Assembly: GCA_907165135.1 (NCBI GenBank)
Contig: OU015569.1
Coordinates: 8,494,001-8,558,000 of the forward strand
DNA: 64,000 nt
DNA from: Oikopleura dioica
Lineage: Eukaryota; Animalia; Chordata
Reading direction: 5' to 3'
The notes under the pieces were generated by a model. The model saw nothing but the letters and a program-made list of their open reading frames with translations, did not search any database and was not told where the DNA came from. A program made the translations under genes and the position numbers. Below are positions 43,926 through 52,560 of this stretch, piece by piece (the first letter of the stretch is position 1; each line of letters opens with the position of its first letter).

Positions 43926-44929
43926 ATGTGCTTGTCCTGCTTCGTCATAAATCCAAAAACGGTAAAACTTCTTCTAAGCCTACAGTAAATGACAAAGTTC
44001 GATTCAGAGTACTCACCAGTACAAGTTTATCCTCGGGAAAGGGTTATTCTTTATGAGCGAATCTATCAAATAATGGTTAACTTAACTCTAGAAAGATTCA
44101 ACAGAGATGAGTTCTACGCGCGCGAGAATGCTCCTTTAGAATGGCACGATTCTCTTTTGGGCGGGTGGGACATGGCACCGGGAAGAGAGTACGGTAGCTG
44201 GCTCACCATGAGCCGCACAGGAAGAGTCGGAATCCTGACGAACGTGTTAGTCCCTCGACCTGACCCAAACGGACTGGCGAGAGGCAAACTTGTCACCGAC
44301 TTTGCTTCCTCGTCCTTCTCCCCGGAAGACTACTTCCGCAGTTTACCACTGGACCAGTTCAATGAATTTAATTTGTCAGCAATTGACCTGCTTACCAAAC
44401 ATGGTAAAATTCAACTGTAATTCAAATTTGTTTCAAAAAAATAATTGCAGGCGCGTGGATATCCAGCAAAGACAGCAGAAAAACGATTTTGTCCGAAGAC
44501 AAGAGATATGTGATGAGCAATGCTCGGCAGCTAAACTCGAAATGGCTGAAAGCTCAGAAGATCAAGACTAAATTCGACGCCGTCGATCTCGATCGTCCAA
44601 AAGACGAAATAATCGATGAAATGCTGACGCTTCTTCAAGATAGCGAGTCCTGCGGACAATGCCCACTCATCACGGAACAGTCCGAAGGCTTCGTTGAAAA
44701 AGCGATCGGTATGGAGCGATACAACTCCATCAAAATTACGGGTTCGGTAGGAAATTAGGGCGAAATAAAGAGTCAAGTTTTAGGAGATGAGCGATACGGT
44801 ACGCGGACACACTCGGTAATAATCGTGGATAAAAAGAACCAGTGTACCTTCGTTGAACTCGATCGCAAGGCAAATGGACAGTGGCATCGTCGATGCGAAG
44901 AATTCGAGCTTGAATCTACACTTCGTTGA
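43926..44929 (+). CDS. TANGO2: TANGO2 (NRDE family)
   Basis: N-terminal MC, FNRDEFY, GSWLTMSRTGRVGILTN, RGKLVTDF, FNEFNL, SNARQLNSKWLK, YGTRTHSVIIVD. Confidence 0.93.
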
Positions 44930-47768: not shown

Positions 47769-48841
47769 ATGAGCTCTCGGCAAATTCTAACGAAATTCGG
47801 AGTTATCGACGCTCTCCGAAATGGATCAGAGAAATCAGCGGCAATGCTCTGGGTACCGGGCTTTTTGGGTACAATGGTAAGGATCTTACCCAAAAAGCCG
47901 AAAACGATGAAAAATACTAGAACGGAGTCAAAGCGGAGGCGATTGAAAAATGGAATAGAAATGTGTTTTCTCAAACGCTCTGGCGTTTCAACTATTCTGG
48001 AATAGGGCATTCAACAGGTCCTTTGGGAAGGTCAAAAATAGAATTTATCGGTTCTTTTTCTTTAAAAAGTGTTACTTGGAAAATATTGTTTTCGATCTTG
48101 GAAGTAGACATTCGAGAACTGGATAGCAGATGCAAATGCCGTACTTGAAGAAGCTGCGCGTGAATGCGATCAGCCGGTTAATATTGTCGGTTCTTCGATG
48201 GGCGGACTCATTTCGCTCCATCTCGCGGCGCTTCAACCTGAGTTGGTGCGCTCTCTTTATCTCTGTGCTCCAGCAGTGCATTTCCTCAAGGATCGAATAG
48301 ATTTAGTTGACCATAGTCCTGGTGAAAATATTCCGATTCCAGACGATTACCTTCACTCTTCCGGTCTAGTGATGGGTTATTTTTATGTCTTTTAATTTCA
48401 TTACGCCAGAAAATAATGATCCATCGAAAGATCATATCCCAAAGACTTTTCTCAAAGGTTGATAAACTTTAAATAAGTCATTTCAAAGTTAGTATTAAAA
48501 ATAGGAGTCGAAGGAAGTTGGCTAGAAGACATTGATCTGAATAATATCGAATCCATTCCCATGCATGTCCTGCATCCAGAACTCGACGATATTTGTCCAT
48601 TAGCTGGATCAGAAAAACTGAAAGAGAAGACAGGCTGTACGCTGGAAATCTTACCAGGGGCGACTCACTAACGGATTTTCAAAGTTTTACTTTTACTACT
48701 TTAGTTTTTTTTTATTTTGCACGAACAACGAAGTGTATGTGTAAGTTTATTTGCGTACAAAATCCAATTCAGTCGATGTCGGATCCTGCAGCGTTGTCTT
48801 ATTGGAAGAATTCGTTGACGAAGTTTATTTCCAGCGTTTGA
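47769..48841 (+). CDS. ABHD10: Alpha/beta-hydrolase ABHD10-like
   Basis: PGFLGTMNGVKA, RFNYSGIGHSTG, nucleophile elbow VGSSMGG, LHPELDDIC (Asp), LPGATH (His). One junction is unresolved. Confidence 0.8.
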
Positions 48842-48934
48842 TATTTCAGTGTTTTTCAGAAAAATGCACAGCAAACATAATTAATAAGCATCCGCGCTAA
48901 GTGATCTCATTCATCAATGGAATGAAGTTTAGAA

Positions 48935-49618
48935 ATGAATCGTGACGAATTCTATAAAGCGCTCGTGGCCGACTTTGTAGCACTCATTGGCGAGTCCGAT
49001 GATGTTATTTCCAATACAGCAAATCTTTCCTCTCTCATATTCACGCGCCTCAGGGCTCAATATGGCAACGGATTCAAATATCTATCCTAATCTCCAGCTA
49101 CTTCTAGTTTGCAATTTTATATTCGCTGTTTTTAATTCGCATCAGAGAGGATGCAACTAACTGGGCCGGTTTTTATTTCCGATCTTGCGAAGACCAGCTT
49201 AAACTTGGACCGTTTTGTGGAGAACCTGCCTGTCAATTGTTGCGATTTAACAAGGGTGTCTGTGGAGCAGCGGCGAGGGATAAAAAGACCTTGCTTGTTG
49301 AAGACGTTCATGAATTTCCAGGACACGTTGCGTGTGATGAGCGAAGCAATTCGGAGCTCGTTGTTCCAATTTTCTTTTCACCGAAGGGTAAAAGCCCCAT
49401 CGTAATTGGGGTTTTAGGAAATGGTCAAGAAATTCTAACGTGTTAACCTATTTTAAAGCATCACAAAGACTGCTTAAAAAGACATGGACTCTCCTAAAAT
49501 CGGAGGCTTCTCTGAGGTTGATCAGAAATACTGCGAGAAGCTGGTGAAGGTTCTCGAAGAACGATGTGATTTTCAAAGAATTCTTGACTATTACAATCTC
49601 AAAACCGATCCGCTCTAG
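48935..49618 (+). CDS. msrC: Free methionine-R-sulfoxide reductase (fRMsr/MsrC, stand-alone GAF domain)
   Basis: NTANLSSLIF, NWAGFY, LGPFCGEPAC, KGVCG, VEDVHEFPGHVACD, SELVVP, GVLDMDSP, FSEVDQ; three exons. Confidence 0.93.
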
Positions 49619-49667
49619 ATTATTAACGAAGTAAAAACTTGTTTTCACATAAACGCCTAGTATTAGA

Positions 49668-50663
49668 ATGGATATAATTTGTGCCGGATTCCCTAAAACT
49701 GCGACTAAATCTTGCTCCGCAGCTCTCCGAGAAATAGGCTTCAATGTTGCTGATATGAGGGAGACATTCTTGCATCTTATGCCAGTCTTTGACAAGTATT
49801 TCAAAGGACAAGCAACAATAGAAGATGTGATCAGCGAGTATGAAAATATAAAATGCACTGTTAATCAAGATTGGCCTGGAAATATGCTCTGGGAGGAACT
49901 CTACAGGGCATCTCCCCATGCAAAAGTTATTCTGACAGGTTGGCAAAATCTCCATCGCCATAACTCTAATCCGGTTCAAATAAAGTACGAAAAAATGATA
50001 AAGAGTGGTTCGACAGCCTCATCAAGTTCATGATTGCGGAGCGTTCTGCCTGTGGCAATTTTCCCTGGTACTTTTTGAGCATGAAATTTCTCGACTGGGG
50101 GTTCTTGGGAAAAACTTTTCACTTATCTGGTTAGAATAAATGTAATGTAGCAATTTATCGGATAAACATAGATTGGATCGCACGAGAAAAAATGGAGCTT
50201 TACCTACCCGGAGTATTTTATTGGGAACGTAGTTGGACTTGGGAAACATCGATCGAAAATATCAAGAAAAATGAAAATGTCCTCCGCCAAGCTTACAGAA
50301 AACATATTGCTTATGTAAAAAGCGTGGTCCCAGCTGATCGTCTTCTAATTTGGGATTTATCAACTGGCTGGCAGCCTTTGTGTGATTTTCTCAAGGTCGA
50401 AGTCCCTCTCAGTCCAATTCCAAAGGTCGATAAATAAGCTAAATATTCTTCTCAGTGCATTTTAGGTCAACAAAACTGGGGACAATTATTTAATGGCAGA
50501 AATGGGGGATGTCTTCAAAGAAGTGCTGCCAGAGTTCGGAAGAAAAAAGAATTTTTTTTATGCATCAATAGCTATTCTTACTGCAGCAGCTGTATACCCA
50601 CTCATAAGAAAAGCTGATCTTCTGTCGATGAACAATAGCTTGGCGGTCTTATTCCGGAAATAA
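49668..50663 (+). CDS. P-loop sulfotransferase-like protein (Sulfotransfer_4-type) with a C-terminal hydrophobic anchor
   Basis: IICAGFPKTATKS (5'-PSB-like), LYRASPHAKVILTVR...WFDS, VKSVVPADRLL, GWQPLCDFL, PIPKVN. Confidence 0.85.
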
Positions 50664-51256: not shown

Positions 51257-52560
51257 ATGCTTATAATGTCGGATTTCGCCGTCAATCCGGTGGCGCCCTT
51301 GGAAGCAAGGAACGGTGTTACTGCAGAGTTCAATAGAGAAATCATTCGCGTGACTATCAAGAGCGACGATGAAGTTTTTGCATTTCTTAGGAACTGGTTA
51401 ATAGAAAACAAAGAGATTGGAATCATCGAAGAGTAGCGCTTCGTCTTTCGGGAATTCGCTTGATTTTTCTTTGCAATAAAAGTAGTAAGTAACCACTCAA
51501 AAGCACTTGGAAAAGCACAAGAAATCGTTGAGATTGATGGAGACTCCACGAACGCCGTAACCATGTTTCAAATTTTTGAAGAAAGTTATTTTATTTTATC
51601 GCAAAAGTTGATGATTGTTGATGATTTTCGAGAGATTTTCAAATGAGCAAAAAATAACTCGATGTGAAGACAAATTTGGAATTCCGTTGGAGAACATCGA
51701 TGACTCGCGGAGCTCGTTGGACTCGCGCTTGCGCGTTGGCAGAAAACTTTCTGATAGCAATTCTGCTAACGAACGCCGTCAGGCCTTAATAAGAATCATG
51801 TTTAATGTTTTAAGCGGACGTAATAGAAACAACAAGTCATTTATTCGAGAGTTGTTCAATTATGGCTGCCACTGTTACCCGGGTGGTTCAAAGAACATCC
51901 TAAAAAGCGGAAGAGGAAAGCCGCTGGATACGATTGATGAGTATTGCCGACAGCACAAAATCTGCTACAAAGTATGCTTGCCTTGATCAAGGAGAGTTAT
52001 GAAAGCTTTAAGTGTATCAATTCGATCTTTAACGATGGACAATGGAATGGTGAAGAGTCGCGTTGCAACCCGGCCGAGAGCTCATACAAAATGATCGCGA
52101 ATATGTCAGCGTACACAGTTAAGTGTAGTGAGGACCAAAACCCATGCAGGAAAGCCATTTGCGAGTGCGACTTGCATTATGCTGAGCAAGTGACAAGTCT
52201 CGATTTCGAAGCAAATCATAACCCGGCTTATCTTCAAAGGAACGTATCAAAAAATATATTAAAATTATATCCTGGAAAATTGTTCAATACGGAAAAAAGA
52301 AACGGGTTCGATTACGATTCTAGCTGCATCAAACGTGGAAACTACCAAGGCGAACATCAATGCTGTGGAGATCGTAACAGCTTCCCTTATCCGTACGTGA
52401 ATAATTTCTTTTGAGAGCTTCACACGTTTTCAGACAAATTATGACAAAGCAGAAGAGCGAGTGCTGTTCGACGGTGGCTTTCAACCCTAATCGCGAGGAA
52501 TGCTGCTACGAAAACGTTGTTGCGAAAATAGGAAAATGCGATACTCAAGGCCCATACTAA
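51257..52560 (+). CDS. Secreted phospholipase A2-like protein (Lys in place of the Ca-binding Asp); 5' end uncertain
   Basis: NYGCHC...GKPLDTIDEYCRQHKICYKC, CRKAICECD, and a C-terminal Cys-rich tail (CCG...CC...CC). Confidence 0.75.

What the first reader, a model, noticed from the sequence alone, without database searches (positions are those of the whole stretch)
48935..49618. Intact free methionine-R-sulfoxide reductase (fRMsr/MsrC) in an animal genome
Seen: a stand-alone GAF protein with all three redox cysteines in their motifs (GEPAC, KGVCG, GHVACD; equivalent to E. coli C84/C94/C118), two spliceosomal introns, and animal genes tightly on both sides, which argues against bacterial contamination. 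Known: fRMsr is described from bacteria, archaea, fungi and protists and is generally regarded as absent from animals, which use MsrA/MsrB. Inference: horizontal acquisition or rare retention giving a capacity to salvage free Met-R-O.
Basis: partly seen in the sequence, partly recalled or inferred. Interest (0 to 1): 0.8.

Follow-up and report, generated by a model that had tools for sequence, protein, structure and literature searches.

The report
Free methionine sulfoxide reductase in Oikopleura
The planktonic tunicate Oikopleura dioica carries an intact, transcribed gene for an enzyme that repairs oxidised free methionine and that animals are usually said to lack, but a 2021 survey had already listed it for this species.

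Summary
Window 48935-49618 (+) carries a three-exon gene for a 179-aa stand-alone GAF protein. It matches solved fRMsr structures at E 1e-24 to 1e-34 and keeps all 14 residues that define the family.

A spliced marine metatranscriptome contig confirms both introns. Both are non-canonical: intron 2 is GA-AG, and intron 1 is GA-AG in three other lineages but starts with CA in this window.

The host is an Oikopleura dioica lineage. The gene order abhydrolase > fRMsr > sulfotransferase > PLA2 is the same in the Bergen reference, dN is 0.13 against saturated dS, and more distant intron-bearing relatives occur in Tara metagenomes. It is therefore a resident, constrained gene and not contamination.

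The protein is of the eukaryotic type. It shares a 6-residue insertion with fungal and protist fRMsr that about 97% of bacterial-type sequences lack, and it sits among eukaryotes in the tree, with weak deep support. The data cannot separate vertical retention from eukaryote-to-eukaryote transfer.

This is not new. Hage, Rosso and Tarrago (2021, Table S1) already list O. dioica CBY16434.1 and CBY13678.1 as fRmsr genes. No enzyme activity has been assayed.

The parts
48935..49065 (+). Exon 1 of the fRMsr gene (ATG to the first two bases of Gly44).
   Evidence: ORF and translation. The spliced RNA contig covers 48991-49064. CDS assembled.
49066..49145 (+). Intron 1, 80 nt. It reads CA..AG in this window (equally GC..CA if cut one base to the left). 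The homologous intron starts with GA in three other O. dioica-type lineages.
   Evidence: Joint 49064>49145, 80 nt skipped, one base of ambiguity. Alignment of the donor across the window, L011, L006 and L013/L014. Bergen intron solved as GA-AG.
49146..49417 (+). Exon 2. It holds the GAF core with W50, Y54, C73, C83, the HVACD motif (catalytic C107) and E114.
   Evidence: Translation. Pfam GAF_2. Alignments to 1F5M, 5HL6 and 3KSF. Residue audit.
49418..49481 (+). Intron 2, 64 nt, GA-AG. The codon of Asp135 (yeast Asp149) is formed across this junction (G|AC).
   Evidence: Joint 49415>49480 with two bases of ambiguity. Same position and GA-AG ends in the Bergen gene.
49482..49618 (+). Exon 3. 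It holds the D-M-D substrate-binding motif, the C-terminal helix and the stop codon.
   Evidence: Translation. The RNA contig covers 49480-49604. Alignment to solved fRMsr structures through the orthologue P0004.
48198..48671 (+). 3' exons of the upstream alpha/beta-hydrolase gene. Its stop lies 263 nt before the fRMsr ATG.
   Evidence: ORFs. Weak Abhydrolase_1 hit. The same neighbour in the Bergen contig is annotated Hydrolase_4/Abhydrolase_1.
49668..50437 (+). Downstream Sulfotransfer_4 gene. Its ATG lies 49 nt after the fRMsr stop, so the two genes may form an operon.
   Evidence: Pfam PF17784 at 7.9e-16 and 1.6e-18. Same neighbour at 48 nt in the Bergen contig and in a third lineage, L012/L015.

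Best explanation
This is the resident gene of Oikopleura dioica for a free-methionine-(R)-sulfoxide reductase (fRMsr, the MsrC/YebR/Ykl069w family). The product is a cytosolic, single-GAF-domain thiol oxidoreductase of 179 aa.

Inferred mechanism, by homology:
- Free L-Met-R-sulfoxide binds in the GAF pocket lined by Trp50, Tyr54, Glu114, Asp135 and Asp137.
- Cys107, in the H-V-A-C-D motif, attacks the sulfoxide. Methionine is released and a sulfenic acid forms.
- Cys83 and/or Cys73 resolve the sulfenic acid into a disulfide.
- Thioredoxin reduces the disulfide.

The gene is transcribed and spliced through two non-canonical introns typical of Oikopleura. It sits in a conserved gene neighbourhood and has been kept under purifying selection across deeply diverged O. 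dioica lineages. It probably also occurs in other appendicularians.

Its sequence is of the eukaryotic type, not the bacterial type. It therefore reached the appendicularian stem either by descent or from another eukaryote. I favour eukaryote-to-eukaryote transfer at about 0.6, because the other animal lineages surveyed in the literature lack the gene.

Shown here: gene structure, a spliced transcript, residue conservation, conserved gene order and sequence constraint. Inferred: enzyme activity, the electron donor and the origin.
For: Family membership:
- Exon 2 matches yeast fRMsr 1F5M (2.4e-24), S. aureus fRMsr 3KSF, E. coli YebR 1VHM and N. meningitidis 3MMH.
- The full-length orthologue P0004 matches the same set at 1e-21 to 1e-34 over 160 residues.
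- All 14 residues that Hage et al. name as defining are present: W50, Y54, P66, G69, C73, C83, H104, V105, C107, D108, E114, V116, D135, D137.
- For the orthologue P0004, the ESM Atlas holds a confident model (pTM 0.92) whose nearest structures are GAF/fRMsr clusters.

Expression:
- A 470-nt metatranscriptome contig is spliced at both introns and in frame. The 8 differences the tool listed split into 5 synonymous and 3 conservative changes.

Resident gene:
- Named O. dioica proteins P0003 and P0004 were found.
- The order abhydrolase > GAF > Sulfotransfer_4 > PLA2 is the same on FN653210.1 of GCA_000209535.1.
- Sulfotransfer_4 also lies downstream in a third lineage.
- TANGO2 and PLA2 genes lie nearby in the window.
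- dN is 0.13 with saturated dS against the Bergen orthologue.

Wider relatives:
- L001 and L002-L005 from Tara metagenomes carry 4-5 short introns and form a 100/99 clade with the window's protein.

Eukaryotic type:
- The loop between the conserved N and the NW motif has 21 residues here, as in most of the 66 eukaryote-type rows. It has 15 residues in 284 of 293 bacterial-type rows.
- Every named member of the surrounding clade is a eukaryote.
Against: - No enzyme assay exists for any appendicularian fRMsr.
- The only RNA evidence is one assembled contig from a mixed marine sample, from an individual 2-3% different from the window.
- Three RNA-seq runs labelled with the species laid no useful reads, so they are no test.
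- The window's own allele has C instead of G at the first base of intron 1. Its splicing is therefore unproven.
- Deep nodes of the tree are weak (UFBoot 30-45). An AU test does not reject placing the clade outside the other eukaryotic sequences (p 0.44).
- Absence from other animals was not surveyed here. It rests on the literature.
Confidence: 0.85

Rival explanations
1. Vertical retention. The gene descends from the fRMsr of the opisthokont ancestor and survived only in appendicularians among chordates. It would have been lost independently in almost every other animal lineage.
For: - The sequence is of the eukaryotic type, with the shared 6-residue insertion.
- It lies among eukaryotes in the tree.
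- The AU test does not reject a clade with the springtail sequence (p 0.34).
- The gene is old within appendicularians: a 100/99 clade with 59-66% identical relatives.
Against: - It needs roughly nine or more independent losses, given the absence reported for other animals.
- The clade is not sister to fungi or to the springtail in any tree.
- The springtail sequence pairs with a Mucoromycota fungus instead (95/79).
- No holozoan or other tunicate sequence turned up among the named hits.
Confidence: 0.2
2. Direct horizontal transfer from a bacterium into the appendicularian lineage, as with tunicate cellulose synthase, followed by gain of introns.
For: - Identity to bacterial fRMsr (45-52%) is as high as to eukaryotic ones.
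- Over the core alone, bacterial hits rank first after the Oikopleura-type sequences.
- The AU test cannot exclude a position outside the eukaryotic set.
- Tunicates have documented bacterial acquisitions (PMC7464555 and PMC6523144, listed).
Against: - The 6-residue insertion before the NW motif is shared with the eukaryotic rows and is absent from 284 of 293 bacterial-type rows.
- No tree places the clade with a named bacterium.
Confidence: 0.1
3. The copy in this window is a splice-defective or mis-assembled allele. G>C at the first base of intron 1 would block normal splicing. Retention of the intron meets a TAA at 49088-49090 and truncates the protein.
For: The window reads TATGG|CAACGG where L011 (the 97%-identical lineage), the Bergen reference and a third lineage all read TATGG|GAA. 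The spliced RNA came from a different individual.
Against: - The rest of the gene is intact, with every catalytic residue present.
- An in-frame alternative exists: a GC donor at 49065 with the AG at 49146-49147, an 83-nt intron that removes one residue (read from the sequence).
- The change could be an assembly error.
Confidence: 0.15
4. Bacterial or protist contamination of the assembly rather than an animal gene.
For: None beyond the unusual taxonomic distribution of the family.
Against: - Two introns, one with the Oikopleura-typical GA-AG ends, are removed in RNA.
- The GC content is the same as the flanks.
- Host genes lie 49 and 263 nt away on the same strand.
- The gene order is identical in an independent assembly of a diverged lineage.
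Confidence: 0.01

Closest known systems
O. dioica CBY16434.1 and CBY13678.1, listed as fRmsr genes in Table S1 of Hage, Rosso and Tarrago 2021 (bioRxiv 10.1101/2021.02.26.433065). These are probably the proteins found here as P0003 and P0004; no call linked the accessions to those ids.
   Same: P0004 is the orthologue of the window's gene:
- 179 aa in both.
- Same two intron positions.
- Same neighbouring genes.
   Different: - The window comes from another cryptic O. dioica lineage: 32 of 179 residues differ and synonymous sites are saturated.
- Intron 2 is 64 nt here against about 266 nt in Bergen, where it holds a tandem repeat.
- The intron 1 donor reads CA here and GA in Bergen.
- The paper only lists the accessions. 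[quoted passage not shown]
Saccharomyces cerevisiae fRMsr (Ykl069w; PDB 1F5M, 3KO6)
   Same: - Single GAF domain of about 180 aa.
- Catalytic Cys125 in the H[I/V]xCD motif.
- Cys91 and Cys101.
- Trp66, Tyr70, Glu132, Asp149 and Asp151 are all conserved.
- Extended, eukaryote-type loop before the NW motif.
   Different: - Shorter loop after the GFY motif.
- Gln86 is replaced by Cys, giving C-G-E-P-A-C.
- A 5-residue insertion before the GVLD motif in O. dioica.
- The gene is interrupted by introns.
Bacterial fRMsr: E. coli MsrC/YebR (1VHM), S. aureus (3KSF), N. meningitidis (3MMH)
   Same: Same fold and same catalytic and binding residues; 45-50% identity.
   Different: The bacterial proteins lack the 6-residue insertion before the NW motif.
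Springtail fRMsr (Orchesella, Folsomia), another animal occurrence
   Same: A eukaryote-type fRMsr encoded in an animal genome (Table S1 of Hage et al.).
   Different: It is not sister to the appendicularian clade. It pairs with a Mucoromycota fungus (95/79), which points to a separate acquisition.

Membership tests
fRMsr (GAF-type free methionine-R-sulfoxide reductase; MsrC/YebR/Ykl069w) | Stand-alone GAF domain of about 150-180 aa, homologous to solved fRMsr structures. | tested here: met
   phmmer against PDB chains: 1F5M, 5HL6, 3KSF, 1VHM and 3MMH at 1e-15 to 1e-34. Pfam GAF_2 and GAF on exon 2 alone score below the gathering cut-off. The Atlas model of P0004 (pTM 0.92) lies nearest to GAF clusters.
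fRMsr (GAF-type free methionine-R-sulfoxide reductase; MsrC/YebR/Ykl069w) | Catalytic Cys (yeast Cys125, E. coli Cys118) inside an H[I/V]xCD motif. | tested here: met
   H104-V-A-C107-D108. The Cys column is invariant in 359 aligned homologues. Motif definition taken.
fRMsr (GAF-type free methionine-R-sulfoxide reductase; MsrC/YebR/Ykl069w) | Resolving cysteines at yeast positions 91 and 101. | tested here: met
   C73 and C83.
fRMsr (GAF-type free methionine-R-sulfoxide reductase; MsrC/YebR/Ykl069w) | Substrate-binding residues Trp66, Tyr70, Glu132, Asp149 and Asp151, plus Pro84, Gly87 and Val134. | tested here: met
   W50, Y54, E114, D135, D137, P66, G69 and V116. D135 exists only in the spliced form shown by RNA.
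fRMsr (GAF-type free methionine-R-sulfoxide reductase; MsrC/YebR/Ykl069w) | Thioredoxin-dependent, stereospecific reduction of free Met-R-sulfoxide. | not testable with these tools
   This needs recombinant protein or genetic complementation.
fRMsr (GAF-type free methionine-R-sulfoxide reductase; MsrC/YebR/Ykl069w) | The gene is expressed as a mature mRNA. | tested here: met
   One spliced 470-nt contig in a marine metatranscriptome, 97-98% identical to the window. Runs labelled with the species gave no reads and are no test.
Eukaryote-type fRMsr subgroup | An extended loop (19 residues or more) between the conserved N and the NW motif, against 15 residues in bacteria. | tested here: met
   21 residues in the window's protein. 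The loop has 19 or more residues in 65 of 66 eukaryote-type rows and 15 in 284 of 293 other rows.
Eukaryote-type fRMsr subgroup | Phylogenetic placement inside the eukaryotic sequences. | tested here: inconclusive
   Quick tree: a 66-row set with SH-aLRT 97. Careful tree: same picture, but UFBoot is only 30-45. The AU test for a position outside gives p 0.44.
Gene acquired by recent bacterial transfer | Nested within a bacterial clade, bacterial-type sequence features, and absence from sister lineages of the host. | tested here: not met
   The clade has no named bacterial neighbour. It carries the eukaryotic insertion. The gene is present in at least three O. dioica-type lineages and in more distant relatives.

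The most novel reading that the evidence does not exclude
The appendicularian fRMsr is the last chordate survivor of the ancestral opisthokont gene. In that case, free Met-R-sulfoxide salvage persisted on the chordate stem until after tunicates and vertebrates split, and it was lost many times independently. Oikopleura would then be a natural animal model for the function that Lee et al. (2018) restored artificially in Drosophila.
Probability: 0.2. Interest if true: 0.6.

Novelty: already known. Interest (0 to 1): 0.33.

Why it matters
Reviews and experimental papers still state that fRMsr was lost in Metazoa. On that basis, yeast fRMsr was put into flies and extended their lifespan (PMC5798039).

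Oikopleura is a chordate that keeps a constrained, transcribed gene of this family. It is a natural counter-example and a tractable system for asking what free Met-R-O salvage is worth to an animal.

- The gene model, with non-canonical introns.
- Evidence of a spliced transcript.
- Conservation across diverged appendicularian lineages.
- The eukaryotic, not bacterial, type of the sequence.

This is incremental and not a new kind of system.

Tried and rejected
- A first gene model with a GC-AG intron 1 (49065-49147) and a GT-AG intron 2 (49424-49481) was replaced by the joints seen in RNA. The GC-AG form survives only as a possible rescue for the window's odd donor.
- NCBIfam gave no hit for the separate exons.
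- Three species-labelled RNA-seq runs (X7-X9) laid next to nothing at 88% likeness. They are no test of expression.
- tblastx of the flanks found no shared gene order between the window and the distant relatives L001-L005.
- The word-based protein search with the full orthologue returned almost only bacteria. It could not be used to survey animals.
- The Atlas look-up did not separate bacterial from eukaryotic relatives.
- The AU tests of animal monophyly and of exclusion from the eukaryotes were both uninformative.
- Antisense ORFs at 49448-49858, 49623-49979 and 49132-49326 have no Pfam match, and no Rfam family lies in 48000-50600.
- Contamination was considered and rejected.
- No structure prediction was run, because homology to solved fRMsr structures is unambiguous.

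Full report
**1. What is in the sequence**

On the + strand an ATG at 48935 opens a frame that runs for 43 codons before it needs splicing. A second open stretch, 49150-49422, encodes the GAF core with the motifs GEPAC, KGVCG and GHVACD. A third stretch, 49484-49618, ends in a stop codon.

Exon 2 alone matches the solved fRMsr structures:
- yeast Ykl069w, 1F5M: 2.4e-24
- S. aureus, 3KSF: 4.4e-23
- E. coli YebR, 1VHM: 5.9e-19
- N. meningitidis, 3MMH: 8.7e-15

The three cysteines align with yeast Cys91, Cys101 and Cys125. Pfam sees only a weak GAF_2 signal on the isolated exon, and NCBIfam sees nothing.

**2. Gene model and expression**

One marine metatranscriptome run holds a 470-nt contig that lies on 48991-49604 in three pieces. 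Its joints are 49064>49145 (80 nt skipped, one base of ambiguity) and 49415>49480 (64 nt skipped, two bases of ambiguity).

With AG acceptors, the introns are 49066-49145 and 49418-49481. The CDS is 131 + 272 + 137 = 540 nt and encodes 179 aa. That is the same length as the annotated O. dioica protein P0004.

Intron 2 is GA-AG. Its junction (G|AC) creates the codon of Asp135.

The eight differences that the tool listed between the contig and the window are five synonymous and three conservative changes.

The RNA-seq runs labelled with the species laid no reads at 88% likeness and are no test. The expression evidence is therefore real but thin: one assembled contig, from another individual.

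**3. Host and residency**

I confirmed this: the best named hits are 'unnamed protein product [Oikopleura dioica]', P0003 and P0004.

P0004 lies on FN653210.1 of GCA_000209535.1. The gene order there is abhydrolase, GAF protein, Sulfotransfer_4 (48 nt downstream), PLA2. The window shows the same order:
- abhydrolase ending at 48671
- Sulfotransfer_4 starting at 49668
- PLA2 at 51615-52414
- TANGO2 at 43989

A third O. dioica-type lineage in Tara metagenomes again has Sulfotransfer_4 downstream.

Against the Bergen orthologue, 150 of 540 nucleotides and 32 of 179 residues differ. dN is 0.13 while synonymous sites are saturated. This indicates strong purifying selection over a long time.

GC content is uniform across the region. 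Contamination is excluded.

**4. Wider relatives**

The following form a 100/99-supported clade with the O. dioica proteins:
- P0006, a marine eukaryote transcript catalogue entry, 59-66% identical
- P0124
- the metagenomic loci L001 and L002-L005

Their genes carry four to five short introns at mostly different positions. One of these is non-canonical and is flanked by a GA(C)TAG direct repeat.

Given these features and their marine plankton source, I take them to be other appendicularians. This is an inference, because no marker gene was checked.

**5. Family membership and mechanism**

Hage et al. define fRMsr by these features (yeast numbering):
- catalytic Cys125 in the H[I/V]xCD motif
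- resolving Cys91 and Cys101
- Trp66, Tyr70, Glu132, Asp149 and Asp151
- Pro84, Gly87, His122 and Val134

In an alignment of 359 homologues, the window's protein has every one of them: W50, Y54, P66, G69, C73, C83, H104, V105, C107, D108, E114, V116, D135 and D137.

The full-length orthologue aligns end to end with solved fRMsr structures at up to 8.9e-34. The ESM Atlas holds a confident model of it.

From what is established for the family, I infer this mechanism:
1. Cys107 attacks free Met-R-sulfoxide held in the GAF pocket.
2. A sulfenic acid forms.
3. Cys83 and/or Cys73 resolve it to a disulfide.
4. Thioredoxin reduces the disulfide.

The protein has no N-terminal extension, so it is probably cytosolic. 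None of the chemistry was tested here.

**6. Origin**

A HMMER search of 1.84 billion representatives with P0004 found 3484 relatives. In a 165-row tree, the appendicularian clade falls in a 66-row set with SH-aLRT 97.

Every named member of that set is a eukaryote:
- six fungi, Gregarina, Blastocystis, Vermistella and the springtail Orchesella
- two further members sit on contigs with eukaryotic genes

No named bacterium is in the set.

A careful 100-row tree keeps this picture, but its deep nodes have UFBoot of only 30-45.

An independent character agrees with the tree. The loop between the conserved N and the NW motif has 15 residues in 284 of 293 bacterial-type rows. It has 19 or more in 65 of 66 eukaryote-type rows, and 21, the modal eukaryotic value, in the appendicularians.

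The AU tests do not help. Animal monophyly with the springtail is not rejected (p 0.34). A position outside all other eukaryotic rows is not rejected either (p 0.44).

I conclude that the gene is of the eukaryotic type and is old within appendicularians. A direct bacterial donor is unlikely. Retention and eukaryote-to-eukaryote transfer cannot be separated with these data. Because the literature reports absence from other animals, I favour transfer at about 0.6 over retention at about 0.2.

**7. Comparison with what is known**

Lee et al. 2018 (PMC5798039) state that fRMsr was lost in Metazoa.

Hage, Rosso and Tarrago 2021 searched nr and list a handful of multicellular eukaryotes with fRmsr in Table S1. 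The list includes:
- O. dioica CBY16434.1 and CBY13678.1
- two springtails
- two mites
- an ostracod
- an ant
- a blowfly
- cork oak

Their text does not discuss the tunicate. The core claim of the finding is therefore already in the literature.

**8. Caveat on this allele**

At the first base of intron 1 the window reads C (TATGG|CAACGG). A 97%-identical individual (L011), the Bergen reference and the third lineage all read G, which makes a GA-AG intron.

The spliced RNA came from another individual. Whether the window's allele is spliced is therefore unknown. The possibilities are:
- splicing as CA-AG
- splicing as an in-frame 83-nt GC-AG intron that removes one residue
- no splicing at all
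- a base-calling error in the assembly

**9. Verdict**

This is a real, ordinary member of a well-known enzyme family in an unusual host. It is already recorded for this species. Interest is modest. The open question worth pursuing is its origin and its physiological value in an animal.

Noticed in passing
window 49066 (first base of intron 1); L011, L006, L013 and L014 at the homologous site: The window has C where three other O. dioica-type lineages have G at the first base of the intron (CA-AG instead of GA-AG). This may be a polymorphism, a splice-impairing allele or an assembly error.
   Followed up: partly
window 49619-49667; L006 6906-6952: Only 49 nt (48 nt in the Bergen reference) separate the fRMsr stop from the ATG of the Sulfotransfer_4 gene on the same strand, and I saw no AATAAA in the spacer. 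The pair may be an Oikopleura operon resolved by trans-splicing.
   Followed up: no
L006 6503-6768 (Bergen intron 2): The homologous intron is about 266 nt in the Bergen reference against 64 nt in the window. The extra length is a tandem array of a unit of about 17 nt (TTTTCCCCGATTTATTT-like).
   Followed up: no
L002 about 1675-1745 (also L003-L005): In a distant relative from Tara metagenomes, the intron that splits the D-M-D motif has neither GT nor AG ends under any in-frame cut. It is flanked by a GA(C)TAG direct repeat, as expected for an intron born from an insertion.
   Followed up: partly
window 49136-49156 region of the protein: residue 68 (codon in exon 2, within GPFCGEPAC): The position that is Gln in 295 of 359 homologues is Cys in most appendicularian sequences. 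This gives C-x4-C with the resolving Cys73. It may be an extra redox cysteine. Only 12 of 359 rows have Cys there, and 8 of those are appendicularian.
   Followed up: partly
tree: P0130 (Orchesella dallaii) with P0151 (Jimgerdemannia flammicorona): The springtail fRMsr pairs with a Mucoromycota fungal sequence (95/79). This suggests a separate, fungal-type origin of the gene in Collembola.
   Followed up: no
window 51615-52414 (+): Two adjacent ORFs carry the two halves of a secretory phospholipase A2 domain. They are probably one gene split by an intron or a frame change. The same gene follows the sulfotransferase in the Bergen contig.
   Followed up: no
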